Assembly (NCBI RefSeq): GCF_964194025.1
Contig: NC_134477.1
Coordinates: forward strand, 27,280,001 to 27,343,685
DNA from: Convolutriloba macropyga
Taxonomy: Eukaryota
Direction of reading: 5' to 3'
Length of the DNA stretch: 63,685 nucleotides
A program made the position numbers and the translations under genes. This document shows positions 1,409 through 23,540 of the stretch, one piece after another. Position 1 is the stretch's first letter. Each line of letters begins with the position of its first letter. The notes beneath the pieces were generated by a model. The model did not search any database. It was given only the letters and a program-made list of their open reading frames with translations, and was not told the origin of the DNA.

Positions 1409-2897
1409 CTTGTGACATTTTCAGGATTAAGGTCTATTTTTTCATTCGGTCAAAAAAATAATAGAGGCAGGTGTACCTGTGAAAATTATTTCAGCTGTAG
1501 TATCTGAGAATAGACCAAGGAAAATGAGTATTATTCGATGAGAATTAAACAGATAGCAAACTCTTTGGCAAAGATTTTTCGATAATCACTTGCTGACCCA
1601 ATAATACACACCCTATTTGCCCTTTAATACACCCCAATAATTGCCCTGTTTAATTTGTCGGAACAATTGAACAAGTAATATTTTTATAACAACATTCGAA
1701 AACCATTGTAAAGTGATTTGCTAATAATTATTTTTCTTGAATTTTTTAAATTTAGTCACAATGCAGTAATGAGATTGAAAAGCAAAGAAGTGACTACGTG
1801 GAACGTTAACATTCATTACAACATAATTTATTGTTCTAACTCGACGGATATATAAATTTTGAATCGTAGTATTCTGTAATGTAAATTTTAAAAACTTTTT
1901 ACGTAGAAACTTCCTGTTACTGTTCTGTCTCATTTTTTGAGGCTGAACGAAATGGCAGCAATATTTTACATTTGACTAGCTGCATAACAAGAAGCCAGGA
2001 CAATACATCAAAAAGTCAACAGATCGAATACGAAAATTGGGAAAACAGATCAAAAATTGAATTATTCAAGTTGCGTATTGGCCTATCAGATTTAAGCGGT
2101 CACTTATTATACAACGCCTAATATATTTGCTCGTGATATTTTGTTTGGTTTTGTAGAATTGATATCAAATTTCACGGACTGGTAAGGCATGGCTCGAACA
2201 GATGGGGTTACGTTCTGCCAAGAATGCTTAATTTTAGCCATGAAAAGAGGTTATCTTTTGATCCAATTTTCGATTTTTGATCTCTTGTCCGGTCACCGGA
2301 TAGCATTACAAACCATACATTTTTTGCTGAATGTTAGAATTTAAATCCTGAAATTTTGTAGGAGGCATTTTTGAAGTTTATCCATTATTCTAAGTTTTGC
2401 ACGATTGGACCTAATTCTTACGAGATTGGCAAAATCTCATAGTGTTTTCTACGTCAACTTGAAACGAATACCACTTCAATTGTTCAGTAAGCCGAGTACA
2501 TGTTTCAAAGACATATTGAAAAATTAACATCGCTCGAAAATAGTTCGTCAGTTATAGAAATTTTTGTTTACAACAACTGAGCAACGTTTGCTTTTTTTTG
2601 GGGGGGGAGGGGGGTGTTCAAGCATTAGTTTACATTTTTATGCATAGAAAAAAAATCTAAACAAATTTACTGTTTTTTCTCCTCTAGATAAAATACACCA
2701 TAAAGGTAGGATACTTAAAGTATTGAATGTGCAGTCATTCAAAGAGGACAAGGTGTGCTGTACGTACGGTTTTAGTACCATAGTGTTCTAAATTTACTTT
2801 TTCCTTTTTGCAGTGAATCATGATTGCACGAGAGAACTGTATCATAGAATTAGTTGAAAAAGTTGAACAAAGTTACAAATACCTTTGGAATTGTAGA
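1409..2897 (+). repeat. ~1.5-kb segment, inverted copy of 21454-22942 (copy 1)
   Basis: CTTGTGACATTTTCAGGATTAA at 1409 is the reverse complement of TTAATCCTGAAAATGTCACAAG ending at 22942. Collinear similarity continues with scattered substitutions and indels to TTTGGAATTGTAGA (2897) versus TCTACAATTCCAAA (21454). Confidence 0.92.
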
Positions 2898-3507
2898 TGA
2901 ACAGCTTCTAGTTAAAAAATTAATTGATGCCTCAAATGCTACTAGAATAGGGTTTTTCTTTAATTTGTTGGCTCCCATTTTATCATTGATTTCCCCAAAA
3001 ATACAATAGACAGAACTAAGAGTTAGCGATTCTGTTGTTCGAGAGGTCAAATTGGCAAAAAATTTTGATTTCTTTGCATTTGTTAGCCTCATTTTAAATT
3101 TCGAAATCGACATCGCACAATGGCTAGGTTGAATGTTTTTATGATTTTAAACAAAAAATTGCCGATTTTGCTGTGCAATTGTCAGGTGATAGTCTAAGTT
3201 TGTTTATTTTTCCTCCTAACTGTCGATGCAAAAATTTTAAGCAAGCATCCTAACTCGACGCTCGTTTGGCCGCCCTGTTCGCGTTATAAATTTCTTTCTC
3301 AAATTAGAAAGAATAGAAAGGACTGTATTATGAGACGGTTAATTTCTTGTCTAATTGTCCAAAACAAGTTATAAAGGCATAAAATATAAAGTTAAACAGA
3401 ACGTGCGTAATATTTAAATAGATATATGTTCACTAAATATCAATGAAAGTAAAACCAAATCATATTTATCAATGGTACAACAACTTCAGAGCTTTTATGA
3501 TGAGAAT

Positions 3508-3509
<2 letters not shown>

Positions 3510-3597
<88 letters not shown>
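3510..3597. repeat. (TA)n microsatellite
   Basis: ~88 bp of nearly pure TA repeat with one CA interruption. Confidence 0.98.
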
Positions 3598-3600
<3 letters not shown>

Positions 3601-4569
3601 GAAAGTGTACGTAAAATGACCAAATATGATTGAAACAGATCAAATAGCACTATAATAGCTGAGATTTGAGTACACAATCAATAAACAAGTACAATTTAGG
3701 TAATATGAACTAAATAACAATTTTTCACATTTTCAGCTATGTCCAAATTGGGGCTGAAATGTACGGTTTTTTGACAATAACTCAAAAACTAAAAAAGATA
3801 TAAAGGCCAAATTTTGTGAGTCGATAGACATTGGTAAGATACACATTGTGAGTGAAAATGAAGGTTCTATCTCAAAGCGATGAAGTGCGGCTCTCTTATA
3901 AATTCTATAAGCAATCTTAATACATGGGGAGGCTTTTCAAATGTAAATAGCTCTCACACTAATGATTCAAAATTAAAGAAACTTGGCAGTAATTAGCACT
4001 AGTCTACGATATAGCATATGAAAAAAGAATGAACTAAATCGGACATGTAGTTTTTGAGATAATGAGATTTAAATGTCAGACCGCAACAACGCTTGCTTAA
4101 AATGAGTGCCCATTTCTGACCAATAACGGAACTCAGAATGCAGCACTTGCCCATTATTTGCAATAAGATAGTTGGATGATGATTATTTTTAAAAATCAAA
4201 GTTTTTTTGCAGTTTTTTGCTGGGTATTTTTTACTGTGTTTTTGATTTGCATAATTGAGTCTCTGAGTTGCTCCGTTCCAATAAAAAACTTTTCAAACCA
4301 TTGGGTATCTGTTGTCTCTTCCAACTACCGTTTTTGAGAAGCCGAAGCAGGCGTAAGTATCCTAGTCCACCGTCATCTTATTTAGGTTTCTAATTTTTCT
4401 TACGTACATGCAAATGCAGACAAAATTTAAAACGGAACGGTTAAAACGCACAATAGGATTACCACCTAGATTAATAGAATAAAATAAAATAATAAAAATA
4501 TTCAGTTTTGTTTGTCGCCTTTTTTCTTACTTTTTGTTTGAATGATTGTATAATTATGCCATTTTTCAG

Positions 4570-4707
4570 ATTTGGAGAAGTCTGCGTTTAATCTGTCTAG
4601 AATGACATATCACAATTTTGGTCGCAACAATCACAGATTCATTACAATCTACGATTGTATGTGTGACGAACGCTTTATCAACCAAACATCATCAGGAGTA
4701 TCATCCG
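4570..4707 (+). CDS. GT92/DUF23-like glycosyltransferase, internal exon (first visible plus-strand exon)
   Basis: Acceptor TTTTTCAG| at 4569 and donor |GTGAAA at 4708, phase 1 at both ends. Encodes (D)LEKSAFNLSRMTYHNFGRNNHRFITIYDCMCDERFINQTSSGVSS. FITIYDCMCDER resembles the GT92 N-terminal 'FVYSAYYDxR' motif. Joins in frame to the 8219 exon. Confidence 0.68.
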
Positions 4708-5402
4708 GTGAAAGTGACTGTAGACAAATAGCGATCATCAAACTAACACTTAAGAGCCTCCCTTCACTTGTCATAATATTTGGTACGGACTAATTAATTT
4801 AGCAAAAAACTCAAAACAATTTTCATAGTTTTGTGGAGATAAGTTTTCCACAACTCGCAAACCACCTCGATTTACAGAACCTTTTTAGGAGACAGCCAAA
4901 ACAAGCCGAAATAACTTTTACATTTCAATGGGATTTCTAATTTACATTTATATCATTATCTTTATCGCTATAGCAAGGCTAGGGTATGATAAAATTTGTA
5001 AAATTTTAATGTGAAATGTTGCCTCAAATTATTGGTAACTATTTGTGGTTATCGCCAATCAAGGGTGCACATCCGAATAATTCAATTTTGGTCAATTTTA
5101 AACTCTTCACTTAGTAGGCATTTTCTTGAAAGATGCTTGATTATAAAAAGGCGTTAGGGAGGTTTATCAGTAGTAGCAAACTCCGGCTCCTGTCCTTCGA
5201 AGGGGAGGATGCCAAGTGAAGCGCCAGCCAACCACATCATGGCGCTAGTGAAAATGGCAGACGTGTCAAAATATAGAACATTTATTGCTGACCAATCAGA
5301 ATTGAGAAAATGTTGATTGCACACAACAAAATTTCCATGATTTGAAATATAATATAAACGTTAACATAACATACTCAGGAATCGTGGTATTAAACCTAAC
5401 TA

Positions 5403-6666
5403 CCCGGGTCGAGGTTTTGCCGAAAAATAATGTAAGAATTGCGGTGAAAAAACAATTCTTTTAACGATGAATGTCGTGAAAGCGGTGAATTTTTGTAAGA
5501 TTTGCGGTAAATTTAGCGGTAAAATTTTGTACGGTTTGCGATTCTTGGTGGTGAATTTTTTTCACCGCTTTCACCTGGTAGTGGTCAAAAAAACTCACCG
5601 CTACCAGTCGATTGCGGTGAACAAAAATTCACCGCTAAGAACCGCAAATCTTACAAAAATTCACCGCTAAATTTACCGCAAATCTTACAAAAATTCAACG
5701 CTTTCACCGCATGCGGGCCAGTTGCGGTGATTTTTTTTCACCGCATTTCTTACGTTATTTTTGAGGGCAAACTTGACTGATCAGAAGTCAAAGTCGCACT
5801 ATAGTCTGATCATAGGTTGCTCGAAAGTCTGGACAATGGTCGCACTACGGCCTGCTCATAGGTCTTGCGTTTTTGAACAAAATATAGCTAACGCATTGTC
5901 GGAAAAGTCTTAAAATCAAGTTAAAAAATAACTTTGAGATTTTCTAGCATGATATGTTTTTTCACCCTCCTCTTGTTTCATTCCGGGCTTTAAATTATTA
6001 CACATTTTCATTAGAAATTTGAGTCGCTACAAAAATGTGGTGAATTAGCGGTGAATTTTTGTAAGATTTGCGAATCTTGGCGTTGAATTTTTTTTACCGA
6101 TTTCACCGCAATGACTGCTATTCTTACATCTTTTTTGCAATGTTTTCTCCGCTGACGGTATTTGGTAAAATTAGCGGTGAATTTTTGTCAGATTTTCAAT
6201 TCTTAGCGGTGAATTTTTATCGCCGCAGTCACCGCTATTCTTACATCTTTTTTTGCAATGTTTTCCGCGGTGACGATATCTGGTAAAATTAGCGGTGAAT
6301 TTTTATGAGGTTTCCTATTATTAGCGGTTTCACTGTATTCACCGCTATTCGTACATCTTTTTTGTAATCTTTTTGCGGTGACGATATCTGGTAAAATTAG
6401 CGGTGAAATTTCCTAAGATTTGCGCTTCTTAGCGGTGAGTTTTTCTCACCGCATTCACCGCTATTCTTAAATCTTTTCTTTTGCAATGTTTTCTGCGGTT
6501 ATTTAGCGGTGAATTTAGCGGTAAGTTTAGCGGTGAATTTTTGTAAGATTCTTAGCGGTGATTTCTTTTTCACCGCATTCAACGCTAAAAAAATGCAATT
6601 CTTACATCTTTTTACTGCAAATCTTACATTCTATAGCAATTTTCAGTGTTGACACCTCAACCCTGG
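5403..6666. mobile_element. Non-autonomous TIR element (foldback/CACTA-like) with GCGGTGAA/TTCACCGC subterminal arrays
   Basis: Imperfect TIRs CCCGGGTCGAGGT (5403) and ACCTCAACCCTGG (6654-6666). Dozens of (A/T)GCGGTGAA and TTCACCGC motifs in both orientations at 5440-5750 and 6035-6600. No coding capacity and no clear TSD. Confidence 0.7.
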
Positions 6667-7249
6667 CAGTCAAAATATGAATGTTTTGGGTAAAACTGAT
6701 GTCACATTGGTTTGTGATAGATTTATATGAAGTTACCGATGTATAAGAGTACTGAAACAGAACCTAATATAAATAATGTTCTAAACTTGAAATTAAGAAA
6801 CTCTTCATCAAACCATAAACTTCTTTAAGTTTTTTAGCCACCTTTAATGAAAGCTAATGACGTCAGGTTGCACGAGGTATGTATCAAATTGCACAGGCTG
6901 CGGAGGTATGGCCACGGCCCGGAATTATGATTATTTTCGGAACTTCTCAACAATTGCGCCCTTTGGTAGCAGAGAATTGCCCACTTTCTGTGATATACTT
7001 TACCACAATATTACTTGGCCTACATTTTAGATAGCCGAATATCAGTTTAAGCGCAATTGCGGACCGCTGTTCACGGCCATGCCTCTCATGCGCTGTGAAA
7101 TGTAATTCGGAAATCGACCAGTCGTAAGTTCTTTTCGCTTTGTATTCCGATTTGACTAATTGCAATTTTAATTAGGTAAATTGAACTTAAAAAGATGGAT
7201 TTGATTGCCTCAAGTTGTCTCTAGTTGTTTGTCGGAAAATTGTATTTGA

Positions 7250-7661
7250 ATTCAAAATCTTGCCAGAATCTTGCAAGATTCTTGCAAGATTTCATATTCA
7301 AAAGGCGTTTACGAAAAAAGTCATTTATTTTCGGTTTTGCTGATCAAGAATTCTGATATCAGTCATGATATTTGATTTTCAGATTGTTTTAGCTACCAAA
7401 AACGCATAAATATTTTTTCCGGAATTCAAAATCTTGCAAGATTCTTGCAAGATTTTGAATCCTGGCTAATTTTTTTTCATTGAATTAGGCTTCGTAACTT
7501 GTTTAATAAACAATGGCTTGCTTCAAAGATGTTTTCTAAAACACTTGTACCCAGATTTTTTTGGCTTTGATTGATATCTTGCAAGATTCTTGCAAGAATC
7601 TTGCAAGTTTTGAATCATCTTGAAAGATTCTTGCAAGATTTGAATCCGCTCATCACTATGG
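7250..7661. repeat. Array of the palindrome ATCTTGCAAGAT (relic of a MITE/CACTA-like subterminal array)
   Basis: About ten copies of (A)TCTTGCAAGA(T) in clusters at ~7255-7292, 7430-7455 and 7575-7642. Confidence 0.7.
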
Positions 7662-8218
7662 ATAGCATGGCGTATTTTATTCTATCCAATTTAACGTAGT
7701 ATTCGCTTAGTGGAAACGTATTAGTAGTCTCTGATTGATTAATAAACCCCTCGCTTAAATTCTATTAAAGAATAGACCCCCATTTGCAAAAGGGGTGAGG
7801 GGGAGGGGGCAGTTGTTGAAAAGATCCTTATTTTCTCGATGTTTATCTTGCTTTGACTTTTTTCACTTGTTAACAATCAAGTTAATCATAGCGGAGTGAT
7901 CCAGTGTCTATATTGCGATTTGTCGAAAATTTATGCCGTCAGCTTTATAAGCCGATATGGCTGATCAAAAATTTGTCAAATGAAAAATTGATCAAAAATT
8001 TGGCAACGTGGTAACCGTCACAGAATTCCGTTGGCATATTTCAATGATACGCTTTTTTTTCGCTCAGAGCGAGATATCTGGTTTTTCAAATGATTGCGTA
8101 CAGTAATGCGTATTAGGTTCTACATTATTTATTTAACATAAATGCACTTTGTTTGATGACCGGAAATTTGGTGCAGCTTATAATTCTCACAATCAACAGT
8201 TAAGTCTCATTTTCCAAG

Positions 8219-8640
8219 TGTCAGTCAATGGGTACGTAGGAGAAGCTGATGATTCCTGGTCAATTATTGGGCGAAAGTGGTCTTGTTCATATCAGTTCAA
8301 CCAATCAGATCACTCCAATTTACCACAAAGAGCTCCCATTGGCTACATCGGCGGACGAAAAGACGGATGCCCTTATTTGAATACATTGAGCTACGCAATC
8401 GGAGTTATTATTTGTTACCTTGATCCGGAAATCAAAGTTTGTCCAAGCTATGCCTCATTATTAACAGGCAGTAAGTACGAGTTAGTTCAAAATCGCGTCA
8501 AAGTTACTCGTCAAATTAGAGGGCCGAAAAACAACGTGGCCTTGTGTACCAACGCACCTTTAGCAATTCCAAATTCAGATTTCCTAACTTGGCATAAATT
8601 TGTGGAGTTTATGGAATACCAATTGATGTCTGGATTTGAG
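8219..8640 (+). CDS. GT92/DUF23-like glycosyltransferase, internal exon (start of catalytic domain)
   Basis: Lies within ORF 8149-8676. Acceptor TTTTCCAAG| (8218), donor GAG|GTTGAG (8641). VALCTNAPL...WHKFVEFMEYQLMSGFE matches the GT92 signature 'VCxxPL...xxLVEFIEYYxLxG'. Confidence 0.85.
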
Positions 8641-8732
8641 GTTGAGGATCTGTTTCCTTTTTTAATCCAAAATTAAGTTGGGTCTTTTTAAACGGTCTTT
8701 TTTGCAAAGTGTAGGATACTCATGCAGGATTT

Positions 8733-8901
8733 GGATCTATTCTGTTCGCCCGCCCCCCGTGTTTTTTACGCCCCCAGTTACAATTTATATGTTGTTATAT
8801 AGCACGTTACTATGTAGAAAAAAATGGCACGTGCGCCTGGGAACGTAAAATATTTAAACCCACTAAGCTGAGAGGGGGGGGGGGCAAAACAGAATAGATC
8901 C
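8733..8901. mobile_element. Small MITE with G/C-run TIRs
   Basis: GGATCTATTCTGTTCGCCCGCCCCCC at the left end and GGGGGGGGGGGCAAAACAGAATAGATCC at the right. Internal GGCACGTGCG and CCACTAAGCTG motifs recur near 44345, 46241, 47028 and 47322. Confidence 0.65.
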
Positions 8902-9449
8902 TGGGATTTTTAAGGGAGCAGTTTTTTGACCAATCAGACAAAGGTATTAAAGTGTGTCGTTACACACACCTGGACCTAGTATCTCACGAATATCAGAAGC
9001 GTAGTTGTCTAAGTCTCAGTCCTGGAAAACAATTAGTAGAAGGCAGAAAACGACTAATAAGAGGCAATTAGTCATATTTGCATAGGAATACCAGGACTGA
9101 ATAAAATTAAAACTGACTATTATGCAGCTAACATTGGAGTTCTCTTACTAATGTTGATGCTGAGACGTCACATTTTTAAAATAAATTTGTCAAATGAAGG
9201 CAAAATTTGAAATAGGGCTTCAAATAGTAATAGTGCGTTTGAAATGGAGAAAAATAAAGAAAACAGTATTTTTTTCCTTCAATTGAATGAATAATCATAA
9301 AAACTTTAAGGACATTGCGCTTTTAAATGTTTTAGACATCTTGCTGTATTTTTTGTTTTTGTACCAACTATAAGTAATTTATTATATTACAGTTAAAACA
9401 TAGGTAGATTTACCTTGACTGAATTAAGGTAAAAAGAAATTTCACGGTT

Positions 9450-12400
9450 ATTGTTCCGACCCAATTCAGTGGGGGACGAACTACAAACTCAACTGGGTTT
9501 TTTTTCCAATTCAAAGAGTATCAAATGTATTCGGGTGCTGTCTTTTTACGATTCGAAGAGGAGTATAGATGAAGCGTCTTTTTTATCGGTAAATTTTGTT
9601 GGAGCGTATTTGAAACCAGAAAAGTAGGTCTGAAAAAAATATCCTTAAGCGAGCAAATTTTTTTGATCAAGTGTGGCATTTTCAAAGCAGTTTTCCTTAA
9701 ACTCCAATTTTATCAGTCAACGATGTTTGTATTGCTTGCTCAAACTAGTAATAGTGCGTTTGAAATCTTTTTTGACCATCTGAATCAAAAATGATGTTTT
9801 CGATTCAATTTTGATCTATTTTTACCATTTTGTAATGTACGCTTTTCAGCAACTTTTGTGTTCTTCTTCAAATGTATATAGCCTTTGTGGAGTCTTATTG
9901 TTCAATATTGCACTTTGAGTGATTTCGATTGGCTTAACGATATAATCGTTATTGATTTTGATTTGTTTATTTGAAGATAATTGAGTAGTTTTCAGCAAAT
10001 TTTGGACAATTTTTGTCTTTTTTTAAGTTTGTTTTTGAATATTTTTGCTCATTATAAGCTTGTCACTGTAGTTTTTCTTGGTGAATCTTTAGTTTGGATC
10101 AAATTTACAGGTTTTGCTCCCAAAATGTGCCATTGAAAATCAAAAAAGAGGGCACTTCTCAATAAAATAAATAATACAAGTTTCTTAATTTTTTCAGGTT
10201 TTTTTTAAATTTTTTTGTGCTTGTTTTGTTTTTTAAATGTTTGCCAGATGTTGGGTGGTAAAGCGCCTGAACAGATGCAGTAATAAAATCTGTTTGCCTA
10301 ATGTTTTTTTCCGTTCTCACGATTTTTGTTTCACCACTCCTTTTTTCATCTCCCCAGTTTCTCTACATACACTAACTTTTCGCCTTTTCTGTGAATTAGC
10401 TTTCAGTTATTGAATGAGAGCTAACTTGTCGAAAGGTTTTTTGTCGGTAGTTGTTTTGTAGCCGCAATTCGTAATGTATTTTTGTTATCACTTTTTGTCA
10501 GTTACTTTTCCATTGCTATTTCGCCTGTTTATTGTTTTAAATTGATTAGCATTATCAATTAAGAGGCTCATTATGTTACCTAGGGTTGTCAATTTTCTAC
10601 TTCGAGTTGTTTCCTGGGGTCTTCCCGCTAAGATCTAATCACACATATTCTTGATATATGAAGTTAATTTGTAGTGATGATTTTGGCCACGCCGAAGCAA
10701 GAAGTGGAGCAAAAAAGCGGGTGTTCTTCTGGCGTGAGTTGTTTTCGCTCAAATTTCAAAGTAAGGTGAGAAAAAGGTTTTTGAACAAAATTGTTTTCCC
10801 GCTGTTTGCGTAGTTTCCGCTTTTTTGTTCACATTTTTCGTATTTTCTGCTTAAAGTTTCGTCAGTTTTTGCAAAATATGATTAAGTTGTCAACTATAGT
10901 CTAATTGGTTTTACGTCTAAACATAGAAGAGAGTTGCTGAATTGTGTGAACCAATTTTTATCGCAAAAATGTCAGCTAAATTTTCAAAATTGTGGTTTTT
11001 TCTTTTTTCCTTAAAAACAGCATCAAAAATGCTTATTTGGCACACTTGTCCAGTTGACCGGTGGTGCAGACCGCAAAACTGGTGAAAGAATCTTCATTTA
11101 CTTGGATAATGGCTAATTATGCCTCCGGTTCCCCAGAAAATATTCTAAAAATAACATTTTTGAGGTCTTTCTCTAATTTAACTGATATTCTTAGAAAACG
11201 TATAGTTTTTTTTATATTCTAAAATTTTCGTTTGCCCCAAAAACCCATTGTGCAGTTCTAGAAATTTTATCGGCCGCGCAGCGAGAGCAATGCCAATTGA
11301 GGTCTCATCACTGAGTTTTGTAATGAAAAGGAACTCAGATTGTTTTTTGGTTTTGTCTTTTTGATTTTTTTTGCCTTTCTTTCATTCCAATTATAAGAAA
11401 GTCTTTTCTCATTTAAAGGTGCCATTAATAAGGCTGTCCTGTATGTTCCAATAATGTCCAATGAATCAGTATTATGGTTTATGAGTAAATCCTCTGGGTT
11501 TTATGACTCCGACAAATAATTTTTGTAATTTTATAACGAATTGATGCTCTTTTTGTAGTCTTACTAGTAAGTTTAATTAATCAGATGTTTAAGTTGGCAT
11601 CTAGGGAGCTATCAAAGAAATTTTTTAATGATTTCTGTTGATACATATTGCTTTTTTGTTAATATAACGATAAGTATTCAAGAAAGATTTCAAATCAAAC
11701 CTCAATTATTGAGAATTTCAAATTACGTGCAATGGAGGCAGAATAATATGCATAACAATTTCAACAAAAAGCATAAGTTATTTGGGCTTCAACACCGTTT
11801 CCATCAAAATGTTCTTGAACTTTTGAATTCAGCCTGTAATCAGCTTTAATGTGTAGTCTTTTGATTTAGTGTTACTTATTACATGTATTATTGGCTTCCT
11901 GGGCAATTACAAGTTCAACTATTAAACACTTTTTGGGAAAGTTTACCGTTGTAATTTCTTAAGGATATTAAAATTTATTTTTCAAAAGAATAAGGGCTTC
12001 TTTAGATTTTAACACCTTCAATTGTGTTTTTGCAAAGTTTTAGAATAGTCTCAATAAAGAGAGAACGCCTTCTTTTTCAAGTGAATTTTAATTTAGTTTA
12101 AATAATGGTGTTTCTGTGTTGATACTACGAGTTTGCATAATTTTTTTTGAAGTTTTCAATTTTTGAGGTTTTTTTCAGCTGTTTTGTCCGATCATCATAT
12201 TAATGGCACATTATTGAATAGTCGCACATTATAAAAACGTTGTCGAATGAAGGCATAATTGATTACATGCCTTGTTTTTATGAATGGATTTTTGTCTTAT
12301 AGGTTTCGACACTGTTTCCTCATAAAATGTAAATAATTTTTTGATTTGTGGCTGTATTTCTTCGTTTTTGTAGTTGTTCGAGATTTTGGATTGTGACTGG

Positions 12401-12944
12401 CCCCAATGGTTTTGTTGGAAGATATTGATAAACTGTTGAAAGATTCCAGATGATAGCTAATTGCTTTTCTGACTGTGAGTTAAATTGTTTTCAAAAGTGT
12501 AAGCGTATTTTTTAACTTGGCCCAATTTGTTTTTTTTCTACTTGTTAAATACTCTCAATAAAGACTGGTCCATAATTCAAGTCATTTGGTTTCGTTTGCT
12601 TCTTATCTCGTCCTGTTTTGACTTTTTCATTATTTTTTTTAAAAAAATGGATAGACATTGAAGTTTGGTCGTAAGTAGCGCTTGTTCTTTTTTAATTTGA
12701 TTTTGTTTGTCTTGTTTCTTATGCTCCTTAAAGGCAGTTATTATTGGCCCTCTAGTGAGTTATTGTTTCATTTGTATAGTGGCTGGAGCTTAAGTGATGT
12801 TTTTAATTTGATGAAACAATTATTTTTGAGCAATATGTGAAAGTTTTCTATCCCTTCCTCATTTGGTGGACAATTATGTCAAGAATGTGGTTGAGCGGGG
12901 TCGGAACATTATGTGTAAACGCACATTACTGAGCCTCCTTTTTT
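9450..12944 (+). mobile_element. Helentron-associated non-autonomous element (HINE/DINE-1-like), divergent copy A
   Basis: 5' TTGTTCCGACCC...GTGGGGGACGAAC. 3' GGGTCGGAACA, then hairpin ATGTGTAAACGCACAT, then TACTGAGCCTCCTTTT. Same asymmetric subTIR plus 3' stem-loop architecture as copies B-E. The interior is divergent, so continuity between the two ends is inferred. Confidence 0.6.
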
Positions 12945-13233
12945 GCTTGAGTTGAAAAACAGGTTGCCATTACTATGTTAAAGTTTTTTATCTGACTTTT
13001 TTAAATCTAATTTTTGTGAGCTATATTGCAATATCTTTGTGATTTTTCACAAAGATTATGTCAAGAACGTGGTTGAGCGGGGTCGGAACATTCTGTGCAA
13101 ACGCATATTACTGAGCCTTCCTTTTTTTGCTTGAGTTGAAAAACAGGTTGCCATTACTATATTAAGGTTATTTTATCTGACTTTTTTAAATCTAATTTTT
13201 GTGTGCTATATTGCAATATTTTTGTGATTTTTC
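12874..13233 (+). repeat. ~180-bp tandem duplication covering the HINE 3' end and its flank
   Basis: ATTATGTCAAGAA(T/C)GTGGTTGAGCGGGGTCGGAAC...TTTGTGATTTTTCA occurs at ~12874-13049 and ~13056-13233. Confidence 0.92.
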
Positions 13234-14489
13234 AAATAACTTTGAGGTAGATAATTGAACACTTCGAGTACAAATTTTGCGTCGAATGGGGGCAGACACG
13301 GACGCTTTTTTTGAATACTAGTTTCCTCATTTTTGTTTTCAAGAAAAGAGGAAAGTTGCTTTCCAATATGTAAACCCTGTAATAATTTATTTTAACCAGA
13401 ATGGTAGAAGTGGTTTTTGATCACGGAAACCAAAAAATAAGTTTATGTCAAATCAGTTTTTTTTGCTTTTTAATTAATAAAGCTTGGGTTGTTTTCTCGT
13501 CGTATTTAGTGCTTTTGATTATTTCGCACCTTAGAGACAAAAGTGTTTCCAAAAGTGTTAAAGTCCATTGGTGTATTTTCTTACTGTTTCTTTTTTAAGC
13601 AGCAAATATTGTCGTTTCCGTTACAATTAACTCCAAGTCTCGAGTCTCAATCAAAGGATGGATATAATTTTTTATATTTTCAGATTTTGTATCTTTTGAT
13701 GACGTTTTTTCCCAACGCGTAATGATATTTTTTTTTCAGAAATGTATCTTTTATAGCGTGTTGGGCGTTGGTTGTTTGAACGTTTGCAGCTTTAGTTTTG
13801 TGTTGATTGAAGACCCGAGATTTTTAGTTTCTCTCAAATACCTCCATTATATTTCAGAGCTTAATATTTTCATTTGAATTGAATATTCGAACGCATGTTG
13901 CCCATGTCCGCGATTGCAGCCAACATACTGAAAACAGTCGATTCTGCTTTTAAATGAATTATTTTTGTCGAAAACCTCCATGTGACGAGTTGGCATGTTT
14001 TCATGGACTTGAAAAGTACCTCGTGTTTTTGAGGGTTTGTGCTATAAAATGAAGTTAGCAGAAAATGTTGGTCAAATATTTGATCACAAACAATTAGCAA
14101 AAAATTCCAGTTCTGAATTAAAAACAATTAACTTGGTTAACAAAACGGTGGTTGTCAATACAACAGACCAACAGTTTATGAATCTCATTTCATCGGCATT
14201 TTTTATTTTTCACATGTAAAATGTATGTTTTTATTCTCTCCACTTTGGTCAGGTAAGAATAAAAAAACTAGAACTGCACAAAGATAAGGCTGCCGTTTGT
14301 TGCAATGGTTTTGGCGACTCGTCACTAGAGGACCAATCTGGACTCTTCTTATTCTGAATTGGTTAAATCTGGCCAAAAAAGCGTGTCAAAATCAATGAGA
14401 CAGACCCTTGATCATATCTGTCGACAATGATTGCAACAGTACTGGATCAACCATCTCTCCTCCAAGCGGTCGAGCACCCAAAAAGCAAA

Positions 14490-15640
14490 ATAGTCTACCA
14501 GAGAGCCCGTGCCAGCAATATTTCCGCTGATCCCCAAATAGCGATGATTGACAAGGATTGCATTAGTTTACAAAAAGCTACAGACAACCCCTGCGCTTGG
14601 AAGGAACGATTTTCACTTTACACAGCCAACCGCTTGAGTGTTTTCTTGAAGGTTGTCGATATCCCGCCAAGGACTTCAATTGCAAGGGTAACAAATGTGA
14701 TTCTCATTTTTGCGCAGTTATCGTCGTGGAGACAAAATTTTCTTTCATCTGCTGCATCAAGTGCGTATCCTGCCTTTGTAGCCGCATTAGTGAGAGAGTT
14801 GGATTGCAGCGACGAAGTAACAGTTACATCAAATGCAACAGTTTTCCCCGCTTTCCAAGTCAGGAAAAAGACGTCTCCGGGGCGTGACTGGCTTTCTGGA
14901 ATTAGGTTCTTTTTTTCCACTACTGGTGAGAGATTCGCAGATGAGCAAGCAGACACTATTTTATCTCGAATCCGGTCATGTCTTGCAATTGCGTCTCCTC
15001 GACCGTGACACGCAATGGCATGATCCCCATAGATGTCAAGAATTCCTGTTTTACAGATCGGGCACTTCCTTTCGGCGTCGTAGACAGGGACACCCAACCT
15101 GTACTTTGCACTAGTTTTATACTCATTTGGTGCCATATGAAGCCCAAGAGCTGGAATGGGGGGAGCAGACAACCAAGCTCCAGCTTGTCGATCAGACAAT
15201 GAGAGAAGTCGGGCGTATTCTCTCTCACAAGCTAGATTCTCTTTGAGATCATGAAATTTTTCATTATCAAGAGCATGCTGAATCGTTTTTTGCGAGAGGT
15301 TTGAAATGTCCAGTTGTGCTATACTGGAATAAAGATCCTGAAAAACTTGTCAGTTTTTTGGGTTTTAACCGGTTTTTTTTCAAAACAAGATCTTCAGAGG
15401 AGAAAACAGAACCATTGTATGATGCTTTATACTGGTCTTGGCATTGGCGAACACCCAACCCTGAAATAAATAAAAAATATAAAATTATTGATCGGAGTGA
15501 ATCTTTCTTCTTTGTTAGTGTTTTTTGTTTGGTTGAAAGCTTCAAACTTTTTTCACTTCAACTGTTTTCTATTGGCAATTTATAATGAATATTTTTTAAA
15601 AAAGTTGTTATTAAATCTGTTCCCCAATTTAAGGACCCGA
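14490..15640 (-). mobile_element. 5'-truncated CRE-clade-like non-LTR retrotransposon (end of RT, CCHC finger, restriction-like endonuclease)
   Basis: ORF 14618-15199(-) has AGAWLSAPP, CPIC...GDHAIAC (CCHC), RHD, RPGD, FDVTV and LAIEVLGG, the motif order of RLE-type non-LTR elements. Upstream fragment SGLGVRQ...KASYNGS (15267-15545) resembles the GGLG motif. Disrupted by stops and frameshifts. Confidence 0.85.
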
Positions 15641-15878
15641 TTGATACTGCACCGAATTCGCTGCTAGAAGTTCATTGAATGAGAAGATTTTGTCACTATT
15701 TGTTTACAAAACATTTTATTTGTGTTAGGTAGTTGCTTTGTAGGTACCAAATTTCAATTTTTTAATGTGTTACTTTTAGAATTGTTTCAATTTTTATCAT
15801 TTAGTTATCACTGTTTTTCATTCACAAGTTTGGAAAGCTAATCATTTGATTGCTTCGAAGCAAATAACAAATAACTAT

Positions 15879-18400
15879 AACAAGGATGCTCGTTAACGCG
15901 CGTTCGCACATGATGTTCCGACCCGAGCATCTACGACTTACATTTATGACTTAATTCATCGGCATTTACGACTTACATTTATGACTTAATTGTCAACCAA
16001 ATGTAGAGATAATCAAAATTAGATGCTTCAGTTTAAAAGAATTGTTACACAACCAAACCACTAATTGAATTACACATGCCTCATTGCAATGCTCACTAGA
16101 TCTGCAATTAACAAGAATACGAGAAACAAACAAACAAAAAACAAAATAAGCAAAAACTAAATGTTTCACTGCAAGAACTCAATATCTAAAATTAAACGCA
16201 CCTAGTAAAAACGTCAAAATGCAGTCGGATGAACCTTAACTACACAAATTTACTTTTTCGTAACTATTGAGCATGGGGGAATTTTACTTAACAAGACTGG
16301 GTAACGAGTCACAAAAAATTATGAGGCAAAATTCAAAAACCAATCAACATTATTTAAATCAAATAACTTCAAAATCTAAAAAAATTGTTAACAAAATACT
16401 TCTTGATAAAATTTTAGTCATATGAAGTCATTTAAAGTCATTATGAAACGAATAGGACATGTCTTTGGTTAGACTAAGCCCTAGAAAATGTCTAAAGATG
16501 CAGAAAAACTAAAAAAGTTACAAACAATTAACGAAAACACGAAATATTAAAGCCATTAAAATCTTTAGCTATTAACTGAATATTATTTTTTTTCAACTGT
16601 TACTCACAAACAATCACTGACAAAGATTTTATGAAAACTCTGATTGACCAACAAACAAACATCAGTTACGACATAATATCAATAGACACGTTATTTTTTG
16701 AGTTTCACGGATTTGGTTAGGACCGCTCAATAATGAGAATAAGTTACAGTTTGAGGAAATGAACAAGAAAAAGTGAAAAATTTACAAAATCTTTGAAAAC
16801 AAAAAAGTCATAAATTTTAAGATTTCACTATAAACTGAGTGCATTGAGTAACATCATTCACTCAATCCTCAATTGGAGGTTTATAAGACCGGCCAGTTTT
16901 TTTAATGCTACATAAAAAACAGGCAAAAACAGCAAATTCAAGAGAATTGAGCGAGAAAAGTGGCAGCCTTTAAGAAATGAAGTTTTCAGTAAAAACATTT
17001 CTGTTCTCAGTTAAATTTTTAACCGCAATTTTTATAAGATGAAAATGCTCACCAGATTATTTTGGTTGCAGTAGAAAGGAAGTGGCTCCTTTTTTTACTG
17101 AGCCCGACTTACAGTTCATGAAATCAAGTGTAAGATTGGTTAATGTTCAAAAATGTTTTCGAAAAATTAGTTTTTTTAAGTTTTAACAGCCATTAATCCC
17201 AATTGCTTTTAGCGGAAGTCAATAAAACGCTAAATTGTGCCTTGATGGGTAGACAAGTAAAGCATAGATGGGAATGAAAATTGTTTGTCATTCATAACTC
17301 ATCAATATGACATCACAAAAAGTCTGATGAATATGAAAACATCAAAAATTAGAACACCAAAATTCAGTAGAAAAGTGCGAGAAGAGAGTGTCAGAGCCTT
17401 TTTTATCGATAAGCTTTTTTTATGAAGATTTTATGTCTGAGCCATTGAACGTGTTTGTTAGGTAAATGGGAACTATCAATATTAGGATAATGTGATAAGA
17501 TTTCGAAAGGAACCAAAATTACGAAAAAAATTTACAAGAATTTAATTTAAAAATTATGCAAACTCGTGGCATCAAAGTCATTAAACCAAAAGCTGGACAA
17601 TAAAACCGCTAACCAGGTCAATTTTGGTTGCATTAGAAGGGAACAGGTTCCTGTCTTTACGAGACTGACTTAGAGTTCACAAAAATATTTTTAAGATCGG
17701 TTAATGTTTTTTAAGAAATTTCCAAAAATCGTTTTTAGTTTCAACAGCCATCAGCTGTCCACTCAAAGTACTAGATATGTTCAGTTAATGTTCATTAGGA
17801 ATACTACTACACTTTTTGTCAACGAGTCTATGCCGTAGGACTCCAAAAATTAGAAAATCTGAAACAGTAAATCGTATTTTCAAGGTTTACTCAAGGAGTC
17901 CTTGAAAACAAATGTTTTGTTCATTGGGCGCCATTTTACTGTAAAAGGTTTGCCATTATGAAAAGTGACTACTCTCTTAGTGACTTAAAGAATAAAAAAA
18001 ATAATTTATAAAAAAAACAGCTCTCAAATTTAATTCAAATTTTTTATAGTTAACTTCCCTATGTGACCAAAACTTTGTTTCATTTTGGAGCGTGAAATTT
18101 AATTTTGAGTTAAAAGTGTTTCAGAAAAAAAATTTAAACAAAAATTACAGTAAAAGGTGAACAAAATCTGGCCAAAATCAAGCCAAAAACATGGCACACA
18201 AAACTTTTACACCCGATAACTCCTCGAAAATTACGTAATTAAAAAAAATCTTTTTAATTTTGATTTCTACTCTGGGCAAGCTTTTTAATGATACCACTCA
18301 CATTTCTCTACGATGAATATATCGATCGCCCAAAAATGTCTGAACAAAAAAACCCTTTTGAGTATATAGTTCCTCCCCCCACAAGTGGGGTCGGAGCAAA
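15879..18400 (-). mobile_element. HINE/Helentron-type non-autonomous element, full-length copy B
   Basis: On the minus strand: 5' TTTGCTCCGACCCCACTTGTGGGGGGAGGAAC and 3' GGGTCGGAACATC-ATGTGCGAACGCGCGT-TAACGAGCATCCTTGTT. Interior collinear with copies C, D and E. Confidence 0.8.
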
Positions 18401-20143
18401 TGGTCTTTTTTTCTACCGTTTTTGTTTCATTTTACGCATTTGTTTATGGCAGAATTTTGCAATCTTTTGGAAATCTTGCCAATACAAAAATGAAGATTCA
18501 TTTATTTTTCAATGGCAAACGTGATGAACACATCTTGCTCATAAATATCACAAATGTTTTTTTTATAAATTAGCAACGTTTTTCACCAGATTTGATTAAA
18601 TTTTGGTCTAATTTTGATTACAAAGTCCACACATGAGTACACTGTTTGAAAGCCAATTGATAGTTAAAAGCTAGTGAAACTTGAATGTGAGATTACTTGA
18701 CCGTGTTGACAGTGTTAATCAAGAGCCGTGCAGTGGTTTGACATTTTAGTTGTAATTTCCAAGTGATTTTTCGATTCCTGTAACTTTGCTTGAAAGACGC
18801 ATGTTTCAAGTTTAGAAAAGCCGGTATTTGTTTTACTTGCAATGGTTACCATTTTCTATAACAATTTCCTGCATTCTAAATTCTGACTTCTAAGTTGCGG
18901 CATTTTAAAAATTACATGTTGGCGTTTTAAATGAAACAAAACAAAATTAGATTTATACTAAGTCAAATTTGACAAATTGCTCAATTGTAGGGGTTCTACG
19001 GAGAGTGGGTTTATAATTGTTTTTCAGACTTAGAGTATTCAGTTTTCGAAATAAAAATAGGTTTTTTTTTCAATGAAAACAGACTGAAAAGGAAATAGTT
19101 GCAAGGTCGTGATAATGCCCAAGCCATGGAATCTGACAGATTACCCACTTTCAAAGGATCTTCAGAGGGCAATAGACTTCTATGTGGACAGAGAATCTCT
19201 ACGTGTGCTGGATTTGCCCTATTACGTGTAATCAGAACCCACACATTCGCCCATTGTTGTTGACAAAATTGTGCAGCTTTACATAGAAAGTTGAGATAGC
19301 CGAACTCCGACATTTATATTGTAAGATCTTTCCAAGGTTGTTATTTTGTAATACTCTTGAAGGAAGGTTCTGACAAGATGACCGTCCTTTTTGTAATACT
19401 ATTGCATGAGCACAATATTTTTTGGGCACAACTTTTCTTGTGAGAAACTTGCAACAGTCTGAATAGTTATCAACGGGCTCTAAGTTCTAGAAGCATCATA
19501 TAACTGTACATTTATTCCTCTAAGTAATCGAAATGGCCTTTTTCAGCGCTCATAAAGCTTTTAAACACAATTATGTCACCAACAAAATGCAAGCTGGTGT
19601 GTGTAATAACTAAATGTAAAACCTTTGACAAAACTTTTTATTGATCTCGGTCTTTTCCGTAAGGAAAATAGTCCAATATTTTTTTTATTCTATAAGATTG
19701 TGATGCCAGGCAACTTATTTTATACAAAAAATCTAAATGGTCTAAAGTATGAAAGGTCTAAGATAAAAAAATTTCCAACCCTTCGGTCGGTCAATTTTAA
19801 TGGATATAAAAAATTAAGGGAAAATTATCTGATCCAGTTCAGGTAGACGAAGTTCGAAGTAGACTTCAAGTGTACAGGTGCCTGGAGATCACCTGAAATG
19901 TATTTCGCGTTATTTGTCAGGTGCTAATTGAAAGTTAAGTATTTATGCATTGCATAAACGAGCAAATAAATATAGCAATAAAACGTCAAATTTTTAAACG
20001 ATTAATGCGTAATCGTGTTTCATCTAGTGATCATTTTTTTGGAGGCTAAAACGCAATGGAGCCATGTTTATCAATTGTTTTATGAAGCTTTTTTGTAAAA
20101 TGTTTTATTCCCATAGTATTGTGCATTGCGCCCAAAATTGTAA

Positions 20144-21450
20144 TTGCTCCGACCACCCTTGTGGGGGGAGGAAGTATATACTCAAATGGGTTTTTTTTTG
20201 TTCAGACAATTTTGGCCGATCGATATATTCATCGTAGAGAAAAGTGAGTGGTATCATTAAAAAGCTCGTCCAGGGTAGAACTCAAAAGTAAAAAGAATTT
20301 TTTTTCGAGTAGTTAACGAGGATTGAAGTTTTGTGTGAACACGGATATTTGCACGATTTTGTTCCCTTTTAGTGTAATTTTTCTTCAAAATAAGATTTTT
20401 CTATAAAAATAGTAAACCAAAATTACATTTCACGCCACAAAATAAATCATTTTTTTGATCAAATTAGACGAAAAGGGATAAAAAAGACTAGTTCTGGTCT
20501 CATAGGGAAATTTACATTAAACAAATTGAAATTTATTTGAGAGCTTTTTTAGAAAAATTTTTATAATTTTTAATTTTTTAGTAACCTAGAGATTAAGTAC
20601 TTTTCAAATCGCGGTTTTGTTAATGACAAACTTCATTTACAGTCAAACTAAGCCCAATGAACAAAACATTCGTTTTCTAGGAATCGCTCGTGTTTTTTTT
20701 TTGGAATCGACTCTCAGTTTTGGTAACTTTAAATGAAATTTTGATTTTCTTTTTGAGGTTTTACTAAATTTTCGGAGTCCCATGGCATTCGTTGACTCGT
20801 TGACCAAAAATAAAGTAAATTTCGCAATGATTATTACGTGAACATATCTAGTGCTTTGAGTGGACAGCTAAGGGCTGTTAAGTCTTTGAAAATAAATTTT
20901 CGAAATTTTTTTTTAACATTAATCAATCATAAACTAATTTTCGTGAACTGTAAGCCACTCTCAGTAATGACAGGACCCCTTCCTTCCTACTGCAACCAAA
21001 CTTAATCTGGTTAGCGGTTTAATCTTCTAGCTAATGGTTATATGACTTCAATGCCATAAGATTTCAAAACGTGTTGGCTATTTTCGTATTATTGGATGTT
21101 TTGAAATCTTACCACGTTATCCTTAGATTGATAGCTCCCATTGGCTTAAACAAAGAAGAGGTTCAAGGAATCACAAAAAAAGATTCTAGAGAAAAATTTA
21201 TGGTATAAAAGGCTTTGACACTTTTTTCTCGCACTTTTTTACAGAGATACTGGTGCTTGCATGTATTTTTTGTTTTTTTTTCATGGTAATAAGACTTATT
21301 GTGATGTCTTCGTTATTACCTATGCATAACAGGCAACTTCCCAATGAGGCACAAACGAGCTTATTTAATCACTTTCGTATAAAGCCATTGATATTAATGG
21401 CTGTTACTTAAAAAAAACGTTTTTTTTGAAAAATTTTTTTCAACATTAAT
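20144..21450 (+). mobile_element. HINE copy C, 3'-truncated
   Basis: Begins TTGCTCCGACCACCCTTGTGGGGGGAGGAAG and is collinear with copy D. Breaks off within the internal repeat and joins directly to the 21454-22942 segment. Confidence 0.8.
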
Positions 21451-21453
21451 AAT

Positions 21454-22942
21454 TCTACAATTCCAAAAGCATTTGTAACTTTGTTCAAATTTTTCAACAA
21501 TTTCTATGATACAGCTTTCTCGTGCAATCTTGATTCACTGCAAAAAGAAAAAAGTGAATTAAGTACAATATGGTACCAAAACGCTATGTACAGCACAACT
21601 TGTCCTCTTGGAATGATAGCAGTTTCAGTACTTTATGTACCTTACCTTAGCTTTTTTTGTTAACATGGTGTATTTTGTCAAGAGGAGAAAAAACTCTAAA
21701 TTTATTTACAATTGTTTTTGGTTTTTTCTATACATAAAAACGTAAACTAACGCTTGATTACCCCCCCCCCCCCCAAAAAAAAAACAAACGTAGCTCAGCT
21801 GTTGTAAAGAAAAGTTTCCATAACTGACAAACTATTTTCGAGCGATGTTAATTTTTCAATAAGTCTTTGAAACATGTACTAGGCTTATTGAACAATTGAA
21901 ATGGTATTCGTTGCAAGTTGACGCCGAAAACACTATGTGGTTTTGCCAATCTCGTAAGAAATAGGTCCAATCATGCAAAACTTACAATAATGGAGAAACT
22001 TCAAAAATTCCTTCTCTAAAATTTTGTTATTTAATTTCCAACATTCAGCAAAAAAATGTATGGCTTGTATTGCTATCCGGTGACCGGACAAGAGATCAAA
22101 AATCGAAAATTGGATTAAGCATTTTTCTCAGAACGTTACCCCATCTGTTCGAGCCATGCCTTAGCAGTCCGTGAAATTTGAAATCAATCCTACACAACCA
22201 AACGAAATATCACGAGCAAATATATTAGGCGTTGTATAATAAGTGAGCGCTTAAATCTGATAAGCCAATACGCAACTTCAATAATTCAATTTTCGATCTG
22301 TTTTCCCAATTTTTGTTTTCGATCGGTTGACTTTTCGATGTATTGTCCTAGCACCTTGTTATGCAGCTAGTCAAATATAATATGTTTCGGACATTTGGTT
22401 CAGCCCAAAATGAGACAGAACAGTAACAGGAAGTTTCTACGAAAAAAGATTTTTAAAATTTACATTACAGAAGTACTACGATTCAAAGTTTATATATCCG
22501 TCGAGTTAGAACAATACATTACGTTGTAATGAATGTCAACGTTCCACGTAGTCACTTCTTTGTTTTTCAGAAATAATCTTATTACTGCAATGTGACTAAA
22601 TTTAAAAGTTCAAGAAAAATAATTATTAGCAAATCACTTTACAGTGGTTTTCGAATGTTGCTATAAAAATATTTTTTGTTCAATTGTTCCGACAAACTAA
22701 ACAGGGCAATTATTGGGGTGTATTATAGGGCAAATAGGGTGGGTATTTTTGGGTCAGCAAGTGATTATTTTCGAAAAATGTTTGCCAAAGAATTTGCTAT
22801 CTGTTCAATTCTGATCGAATAATACTCATTTTCCTTAGTCTATTCTCAGATACTACAGCTGAAATAATTTTCACAGGCACATTTGCCTCTATTTTTTTTG
22901 ACCAAATGAAAAAACAGACTTTAATCCTGAAAATGTCACAAG
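21454..22942 (-). repeat. ~1.5-kb segment, inverted copy of 1409-2897 (copy 2)
   Basis: Collinear reverse-complement match to 1409-2897. ORF 22797-23018(-) contains CDIFRIKVCFFIWSKK versus CDIFRIKVYFFIRSKK just right of the gap. Confidence 0.92.
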
Positions 22943-23299
22943 TATTGCAATATTTGGTAAAAACCGACAACAAAATAAGAGAATTTGAAACATTAAATGC
23001 AACAAAAATTTGAAACAAAGATTTCTTGTGGTTGCTATATGCTTGTGTACTCTAATCCAAGTAATTTTTATAAAAACAACAACTTTTTACCTCATCCAAT
23101 AGAATGGGAAGTTGACAAAAAATTACGTTTTATTAAATTACCGAAAAAAGAGAACCGATCTAGAGCGCTGTTCGCTATTTTAGGCATATCTGATCGAGGG
23201 TGGAACCACTTAGTTTCTGATCAATTTAACCAAACCACGATTGCATCAAAACAATGTTTGTTTAATTTAGGTCTTTTGTACCCTATAATCGGCGCTAAC

Positions 23300-23540
23300 C
23301 TTGACTAGGTTTTCCAAAATTCTGTTTAAGCAAAATGTCAGCACATGATCCGATGTCTGAGAGAGCTCTCCACCCACCACGTTTAACAGTTAAAAATACT
23401 GCACACTTCAAATCGTCAATGAAGAAGACTAAGGTCGAGTAAGAGCTGAACACGTAAATTAGTATTAATAAGGCTGAAATTGTGATACAAGCGTAAAGAC
23501 ACGTCTTTAGGTTATCTCGTCTTCTCACGGCATAACCCAT
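23300..23540 (-). CDS. Putative first coding exon of a type II membrane (Golgi glycosyltransferase-like) protein
   Basis: ATG at 23540. Encodes MGYAVRRRDNLK (basic tail), TCLYACITISALLILIYVFSSYSTLVFFI (hydrophobic helix) and a stem. Ends at donor CAAG|GTTAGC in phase 1, which fits the acceptor at 4570. Confidence 0.6.

What the first reader, a model, noticed from the sequence alone, without database searches (positions are those of the whole stretch)
1409..23540. The glycosyltransferase's apparent first exon lies on the opposite strand inside its own 21-kb intron
Seen: the plus-strand exons begin at a phase-1 acceptor (4570) with no ATG/TM exon visible upstream. A 241-nt minus-strand exon (23540-23300) encodes a type II membrane anchor and ends in a phase-1 donor; ~360 nt downstream begins an inverted copy of the sequence that precedes exon 4570. 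Joining it to the seven plus-strand exons gives 1656 nt, an open 551-aa frame. Inference, in order of likelihood: (a) an inverted, truncated duplication of the gene's 5' end, with the true plus-strand exon 1 lost in the gap; (b) misassembly or haplotype mixing; (c) mixed-strand trans-splicing as in Drosophila mod(mdg4), or an antisense regulator of the gene.
Basis: partly seen in the sequence, partly recalled or inferred. Interest (0 to 1): 0.78.

Follow-up and report, generated by a model that had tools for sequence, protein, structure and literature searches.

The report
Inverted spare copy of first exon
An acoel-worm glycosyltransferase gene carries, inside one of its own introns and on the opposite strand, an old partial copy of its first exon. 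The working first exon is almost certainly hidden in an assembly gap, so this is an ordinary duplication plus a gap, not exotic splicing.

Summary
The window is Convolutriloba macropyga chromosome 10. The gene is RefSeq LOC142348403, a GT92-family glycosyltransferase. Seven plus-strand exons run from 4570 to 39085.

The minus-strand exon 23540-23300 is real. It has an ATG, a type II membrane anchor and a phase-1 GT donor, and it is 61% identical to exon 1 of a paralogue. Joined to exon 2 it gives an open 556-560 aa frame.

It sits in a 10.5-kb intron (19228-29731), not a 21-kb one. It belongs to a ~2.4-kb inverted partial duplicate. Its arm (22942-21454) is 85-91% identical to 1409-2897, which starts exactly at the 200-N scaffold gap.

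DNA contigs from four public runs contain a second, ~8% divergent copy. This copy carries the plus arm's own indels. It runs 455 nt past the gap-edge equivalent, through the intron start and into exon 1. No such copy exists in the assembly.

An independent assembler reproduces the inverted placement at 99.995%. A 97%-identical sister gene lacks the inverted segment, which looks deleted between flanking direct repeats.

Misassembly and mixed-strand trans-splicing are unlikely. No RNA runs were served, so transcript use is untested. Interest is low.

The parts
666..1208 (+). last unit of a ~1.07-kb tandem satellite that ends the contig left of the gap
   Evidence: copies at 93-96% at C10:27275327, 27276409, 27277464 and 27278557, and at 26.6265-26.630 Mb
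1209..1408 (.). 200-N scaffold gap of unknown true size; inferred site of the unassembled plus-strand exon 1
   Evidence: The assembly was scaffolded with YaHS and has 6,645 gaps. The plus arm starts at the first base after the gap.
1409..2897 (+). plus arm: 5' part of intron 1 of the gene
4570..4719 (+). exon 2, with alternative donors after 4707, 4713 and 4719; the RefSeq start codon is at 4602
8177..8640 (+). exon 3
19106..19227 (+). exon 4
20138..20754 (+). left direct copy of a high-copy repeat flanking the extra segment
   Evidence: read depth 10^4-10^6
21454..22942 (-). inverted arm: copy of intron-1 sequence 1409-2897
   Evidence: 87% overall
22943..23299 (-). first 357 nt of the duplicated intron 1; its plus-strand counterpart is not in the assembly
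23300..23540 (-). duplicated exon 1 (E1'): ATG, membrane anchor, phase-1 GT donor, intact 80-codon frame
23541..23826 (-). sequence upstream of E1', up to the flanking repeat; a possible promoter remnant (inferred)
23827..24466 (+). right direct copy of the flanking repeat (78.6% to 20138-20754)
29732..29756 (+). exon 5 (25-nt mini-exon)
30106..30298 (+). exon 6 (holds the DLDE motif)
34932..35099 (+). exon 7
38766..39085 (+). exon 8 with the stop codon

Best explanation
Proposed history. A ~2.4-kb piece of the gene's own 5' end was copied in inverted orientation into what is now intron 4. The piece holds a few hundred nt of upstream sequence, exon 1 and the first ~1.85 kb of intron 1. It has since diverged by about 9-15%. 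It lies between two direct copies of a high-copy repeat. It is an orphan exon, with no further family exons on the minus strand.

Proposed present state. The gene's working exon 1 lies on the plus strand about 357 nt upstream of position 1409. That places it inside the scaffold gap 1209-1408, so the assembly and the RefSeq models lack it. The models therefore start at an internal Met in exon 2, without the membrane anchor. Normal cis-splicing of that unassembled exon 1 to 4570 is expected to make the full type II protein.

What is shown and what is inferred. Shown: the duplicate, its age, its placement, and the existence of a second unassembled copy that continues the plus arm. Inferred: that this copy lies in this gap rather than at the equivalent break of the sister gene, and that it is the exon used in mRNA.
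For: 1. E1' is a true exon-1 homologue, with the exon 1/2 border at the same place as in paralogues.
2. In three paralogues, exon 1 lies on the same strand 3.3-12.5 kb upstream of exon 2.
3. The plus arm starts exactly at the gap edge.
4. Read contigs:
- Besides perfect contigs on 23000-23324, runs X2-X4 each hold a contig with 27 other letters and 3 gaps. Its depths are 12.4, 24.3 and 30.3.
- In X1, a 990-nt contig of depth 3.9 spans 22407-23397 with 64 other letters and 19 gaps.
5. The indels with that same depth signature are +T behind 22405, +AA behind 22406 and -1 at 22449. These are exactly the indels that distinguish the assembled plus arm from the inverted arm. So the plus-arm copy continues 455 nt beyond the gap-edge equivalent, into exon 1.
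6. No such copy exists anywhere in the 1.18-Gb assembly.
7. An independent metaMDBG-style contig equals window 20128-40315 at 99.995%, inverted segment included.
8. The sister gene A is 96-98% identical in its exon-bearing blocks. It lacks 20140-23825, and its single repeat copy is left-copy-like on the left and right-copy-like on the right. The segment is therefore dispensable.
9. tblastn finds no other minus-strand exons.
Against: - No RNA evidence of any kind was available. All four runs found are DNA.
- E1' keeps an intact frame, ATG and GT donor, so function is not excluded.
- In the stretch compared (window 1870-1985) the arms of this gene and of sister gene A do not differ. The unassembled copy therefore cannot be assigned to one gene.
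- The listed variant contigs reach only 98 nt into the exon. Coverage further 5' rests on summed bin depths.
- The flank left of the gap is a satellite. In the sister block that satellite lies ~113 kb from the gene, so this copy could have a real deletion there.
Confidence: 0.85

Rival explanations
1. Misassembly or haplotype mixing. The E1' segment would really belong in the gap in plus orientation, or on another haplotype, and was placed or oriented wrongly between repeats.
For: - The segment is flanked by very high-copy repeats (depths).
- The assembly comes from ultra-low-input HiFi, has 6,645 gaps and spans 36% more than the k-mer estimate.
- A ~540-kb block is present twice on this chromosome at mostly 96-98% identity.
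Against: - Two physically different copies exist in the reads, about 8% apart. One continues to 2898 and on towards exon 2. The other continues into 21453-21040, supported by perfect contigs in all four runs.
- A second assembler gives the same 20-kb arrangement at 99.995%.
- The sister copy's chimeric repeat fits a deletion of a segment lying exactly here.
Confidence: 0.05
2. E1' is a working first exon. An RNA started at ~23600 (-) would donate E1' by trans-splicing to the acceptor at 4570 of the plus-strand pre-mRNA, as in mixed-strand trans-splicing of Drosophila mod(mdg4).
For: - The frame, ATG, anchor and phase-1 donor are intact, and the joined frame is open.
- Spliced-leader trans-splicing is reported in the related acoel S. 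roscoffensis. Its exact 32-nt leader occurs 2,612 times (up to 3 mismatches) in this genome, against 0 in the control.
Against: - A same-strand exon 1 copy exists in the reads next to the plus arm, so trans-splicing is not needed.
- The sister gene, with an intact reading frame, has no E1'.
- An intact 80-codon frame after ~10% divergence is not unusual by chance.
- There is no RNA evidence.
Confidence: 0.03
3. This gene copy truly lacks a plus-strand exon 1. The unassembled copy would belong to the sister gene only. The gene would then make anchor-less or spliced-leader-capped transcripts starting at exon 2, as the RefSeq models suggest, and may be decaying.
For: - The RefSeq models of both copies start at the Met in exon 2.
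- A paralogue that has exon 1 also has such an isoform, P0006.
- The variant contig's depth is no higher than that of single-copy E1', which suggests one extra copy rather than two.
- The satellite abuts the gap here but lies ~113 kb away in the sister block.
Against: - The plus arm breaks off exactly at a scaffold gap, not at a sequenced junction.
- All seven exons are intact and differ from the sister copy at only a few residues.
- The sister copy's arm also breaks off within 100 nt of the same point, which points to a shared assembly drop-out.
Confidence: 0.1

Closest known systems
Partial (exon-level) inverted intragenic duplications and gene fragments lodged in introns, combined with 5'-exon loss in scaffold gaps
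   Same: - Two diverged copies in opposite orientation.
- The copy is truncated, flanked by repeats and dispensable in a sister copy.
- The annotated protein is N-terminally truncated because the real exon is unassembled.
   Different: The orphan copy still has an intact frame and splice donor and faces antisense to exons 2-4. An antisense or promoter role cannot be excluded.
Mixed-strand trans-splicing at Drosophila mod(mdg4) (from my own knowledge)
   Same: Exons of one reading frame lie on both strands of one locus, in an animal lineage whose relatives do trans-splice.
   Different: - In mod(mdg4) the antisense-strand units are alternative 3' exons with acceptors, and no same-strand copy exists.
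- Here it is a 5' exon, and a same-strand copy is present in the reads.
- No RNA junction has been seen.
Glycosyltransferase family 92 (Pfam PF01697), e.g. C. elegans GALT-1 and plant GALS1 (from my own knowledge), which are type II Golgi membrane proteins
   Same: - The Pfam hit is above the gathering score.
- A DxD-like DLDE motif is present.
- Paralogues have an N-terminal signal anchor encoded by exon 1.
   Different: - The family is very divergent and acoel-specific. Only three 90% clusters were found, all from this species.
- Activity and acceptor are unknown.
Spliced-leader trans-splicing in acoels (S. roscoffensis, PMC9911081)
   Same: The identical 32-nt leader is present in thousands of copies in this genome. 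It could explain transcripts that begin at exon 2.
   Different: The leader adds a non-coding cap sequence, not a coding exon. No leader copy lies in the window.

Membership tests
Glycosyltransferase family 92 (PF01697) | Match to the Pfam model above its gathering score | tested here: met
   P0010 (this gene) scores 28.6 bits against a cut-off of 23, residues 177-391. Paralogue P0005 scores 22.8 bits, just under the cut-off.
Glycosyltransferase family 92 (PF01697) | DxD-type metal/nucleotide-sugar motif | tested here: met
   The motif DLDE is encoded in exon 6. Its role is inferred, not assayed.
Glycosyltransferase family 92 (PF01697) | Type II membrane anchor at the N-terminus of the encoded protein | tested here: inconclusive
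   The anchor is present in E1' and in paralogues. It is absent from the RefSeq protein of this gene because the same-strand exon 1 is not assembled.
Inverted partial gene duplicate | Two diverged copies in opposite orientation, both physically present in DNA | tested here: met
   Searches show 85-91% identity between the arms. Searches show both versions in read contigs, and one search shows the placement in an independent contig.
Inverted partial gene duplicate | The copy is truncated: no further exons of the gene on that strand | tested here: met
   tblastn with the 563-aa paralogue gives only the exon-1 hit on the minus strand.
mod(mdg4)-type mixed-strand trans-splicing | Mature mRNA joins exons encoded on opposite strands | not testable with these tools
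   No RNA run was served. The four runs found are genomic DNA.
mod(mdg4)-type mixed-strand trans-splicing | No same-strand copy of the exon is available for cis-splicing | tested here: not met
   a second copy continuing the plus arm into exon 1 exists in the reads.

The most novel reading that the evidence does not exclude
E1' would be transcribed from its own retained promoter on the minus strand. It would then act in one of two ways. It could be trans-spliced to the exon-2 acceptor of the plus-strand pre-mRNA, as an alternative first exon in an animal equipped for trans-splicing. Or it could drive an antisense RNA across exons 4-2 that regulates the host gene.
Probability: 0.04. Interest if true: 0.85.

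Novelty: new member of a known kind. Interest (0 to 1): 0.15.

Why it matters
The main value is for annotation. The RefSeq proteins of LOC142348403 and its sister LOC142348394 lack their membrane anchor because exon 1 fell into an assembly break, not because the genes are built oddly.

The case also shows how a gap plus an old inverted exon copy can mimic a mixed-strand gene.

The locus gives a dated example of an intragenic inverted duplication that was later removed from one sister copy by recombination between flanking repeats.

Tried and rejected
- RNA evidence: the look-up of sequencing runs (kind rna) returned four runs of unrecorded type. Laying them showed even coverage of introns, so they are DNA. 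Expression, strand and junctions could not be tested.
- Pfam on single exons gave nothing useful.
- A protein search with the 80-aa E1' found only a paralogue's exon-1 ORF at 60%. This is uninformative, because E1' itself was not gene-called on its own contig.
- The search of earlier findings returned nothing for this place.
- I asked whether the two ~540-kb blocks are uncollapsed haplotypes. Identity varies from 83% to 98% and independent contigs have 59x, 59x and 43x coverage. This is inconclusive.
- A simple inversion is rejected. Exons 2-8 are collinear on one strand and the sister copy is collinear with them.
- An origin of the variant contigs from paralogues is rejected. Paralogue homology is limited to 150 nt of the exon, and no other assembled match reaches the 88% likeness needed.
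- An origin as an allele of E1' is unlikely. Local allelic differences are about 1% (X3 contigs), and the variant carries the plus arm's indels.
Full report
**Origin of the window**

The window is G000:C10:27280001-27343685 of a 1.18-Gb, 4,694-scaffold assembly. Proteins matching it are RefSeq models of the acoel Convolutriloba macropyga on a 62,789,662-bp contig. The genome note (PMC13650328) describes assembly txConMacr16.3.
- It was built from ultra-low-input PacBio HiFi with hifiasm, purge_dups and YaHS.
- It has 6,645 gaps.
- It spans 1,176 Mb against a k-mer estimate of 867 Mb.
- Heterozygosity is 3.65%.

**The gene**

A full-length paralogue (P0001, 563 aa) maps by tblastn to plus-strand exons. 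Its residues 1-77 map only to 23540-23307 on the minus strand (61.5% identity, E 5e-22).

The three RefSeq isoforms of LOC142348403 (469, 467 and 465 aa) are reproduced exactly by this exon map:

| Exon | Coordinates (+) |
|---|---|
| 2 | 4570-4719, or 4713 or 4707 (alternative donors) |
| 3 | 8177-8640 |
| 4 | 19106-19227 |
| 5 | 29732-29756 |
| 6 | 30106-30298 |
| 7 | 34932-35099 |
| 8 | 38766-39085 |

All introns are GT-AG. The models start at the Met at 4602 inside exon 2 and so lack a membrane anchor. The protein matches Pfam GT92 above threshold (28.6 bits against 23).

**Check of the observation**

The minus-strand exon (E1') is 241 nt long. It has an ATG at 23540, a hydrophobic anchor at residues ~13-41 and a phase-1 donor CAAG|GTTAGC.

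Joining it to 4570 gives GAT-TTG-GAG..., which reads D-L-E-K-S-A-F-N-L. This parallels the exon 1/2 border of the paralogue. The frame is open for 556-560 aa, not 551.

The host intron is 19228-29731, which is 10.5 kb and not 21 kb.

The inverted repeat is real:
- 1409-2232 matches 22942-22114 at 91.4%.
- 2261-2897 matches 22115-21454 at 85.5%.
- It begins 357 nt downstream of the E1' donor.
- Its plus arm begins at the first base after the 200-N gap.

**Family context**

Exon-1 homologues exist at five places in the genome: E1' (-) and four plus-strand ones. Three of the four lie 3.3-12.5 kb upstream of a detected exon 2. No exon 2 was scored beside the fourth, at 27479161.

A ~540-kb block of chromosome 10 is present twice.
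- The sister gene A (LOC142348394) has its exon 2 at 26746418 and an arm 98% identical to the plus arm.
- The paralogues B and B' are 98.4% identical.
- Gene A has no exon 1 of either orientation in the assembly.
- Gene A's arm match breaks off within 100 nt of the point where the window's arm meets the gap.

**The flank left of the gap**

Positions 666-1208 are the last unit of a ~1.07-kb tandem satellite. Positions 200-669 are a very high-copy element. The gap therefore joins a contig that ended in a satellite to a contig that starts in intron 1. Its true size is unknown.

**Is the inverted segment really there?**

Gene A is collinear with the window from 1509 to beyond 44 kb at 83-98% identity, but it lacks window 20140-23825.

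In the window this extra segment lies between two direct copies of a repeat, 20138-20754 and 23827-24466, which are 78.6% identical. A's single repeat copy resembles the left copy on its left side. It resembles the right copy in its middle and beyond it. That is the pattern expected after deletion by unequal recombination between the two copies. The segment therefore predates the split of the two genes and is dispensable.

An independently built contig (ENA ERZ25071359, ctg28223_59x, 60.9 kb) equals window 20128-40315 at 99.995%. It includes E1' on the minus strand and exons 5-8 on the plus strand.

**Is there a second exon 1?**

The four public runs that hold E1' turned out to be genomic DNA, because their contigs cover introns evenly. 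Three observations link a variant copy to the plus arm.

1. On 23000-23324 (intron start plus the last 25 nt of the exon), runs X2-X4 each show a perfect contig and a second contig. The second contig has 27 other letters and 3 gaps. Its depths are 12.4, 24.3 and 30.3.
2. In X1, a single 990-nt contig of depth 3.9 spans 22407-23397 with 64 other letters and 19 gaps.
3. Indels with that same depth signature are listed at 22405 (+T), 22406 (+AA) and 22449 (-1). Aligning the assembled plus arm to the inverted arm gives exactly these three indels.

The variant contigs are therefore the plus-arm copy. That copy continues 455 nt past the point where the assembly stops at the gap. It runs through the 357-nt intron start and at least 98 nt into exon 1.

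No such sequence exists anywhere in the assembly. Paralogues share only 150 nt of the exon. Local allelic differences are about 1%. So this is an unassembled paralogous copy lying beside the plus arm.

I did not derive or print its letters. I also did not read the region of gene A, or of the independent assembly, that corresponds to the gap.

**Interpretation**

An old inverted, truncated duplicate of the 5' end sits in intron 4. The working exon 1 sits on the plus strand in the gap, and the RefSeq proteins are truncated for that reason.

What is not shown:
- That the unassembled copy belongs to this gene rather than to sister gene A. Their arms are identical in the stretch compared (window 1870-1985).
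- That it is the exon used in mRNA.

Misplacement or misorientation of E1' is unlikely (0.05), given two assemblers and two physically distinct copies with different inner junctions.

Mixed-strand trans-splicing remains possible only in principle (0.03).
- The related acoel S. roscoffensis trans-splices a leader onto 30% of its genes (PMC9911081).
- Its exact 32-nt leader occurs 2,612 times (up to 3 mismatches) in this genome, against 0 for the control.
- However, a same-strand exon 1 exists, the sister gene has no E1', and no RNA was available.

A variant reading (0.10) is that this copy truly lost exon 1 and is expressed from exon 2, perhaps with a spliced leader.

**Verdict**

This is a real but ordinary structure that explains itself: a partial inverted duplication plus an assembly gap. 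Its practical use is to correct two truncated gene models.

Noticed in passing
whole genome; none in window: The exact 32-nt spliced leader reported for Symsagittifera roscoffensis occurs 2,612 times (up to 3 mismatches, many exact; control 0) in this genome. This suggests conserved spliced-leader trans-splicing and a very large leader-gene or retrocopy family.
   Followed up: partly
window 666-1208 and C10:27275327-27281208; also C10:26626543-26630165: A ~1.07-kb tandem satellite array ends the contig left of the gap. A second array lies ~650 kb away, in the sister block.
   Followed up: partly
C10:26.63-26.94 Mb versus 27.28-27.48 Mb: A ~540-kb block holding three GT92-family genes is present twice. 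Identity ranges from 83% to 98% in mosaic fashion. The assembly spans 36% more than the k-mer estimate, so uncollapsed haplotypes versus a true segmental duplication with gene conversion is unresolved.
   Followed up: partly
window 4707-4720: Three tandem GT donors 6 nt apart at the end of exon 2 account for RefSeq isoforms X1-X3 (469, 467 and 465 aa).
   Followed up: yes
window 37243-37806 (+): A 188-aa open frame in intron 7 matches DUF5641 (E 3e-27). This looks like a retrotransposon remnant. I observed it only.
   Followed up: partly
window 32757-33318 and 33716-34280: Two direct repeats of ~565 nt at ~95% identity lie about 400 nt apart in intron 6. They may be the terminal repeats of a small element.
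   Followed up: no
window 18200-18400, 20000-21400, 23830-24000: Elements with read-contig depth of 10^4-10^6 lie in direct and inverted copies around exon 4 and E1'. One more (1994-2290 and 22114-22410) is shared by both arms, so it predates the duplication.
   Followed up: partly
window 45148-46244 (+): Long open frames made of a repeated ~10-residue unit (IRSYTIKIPL-like). This is tandem repeat DNA rather than an evident gene.
   Followed up: no
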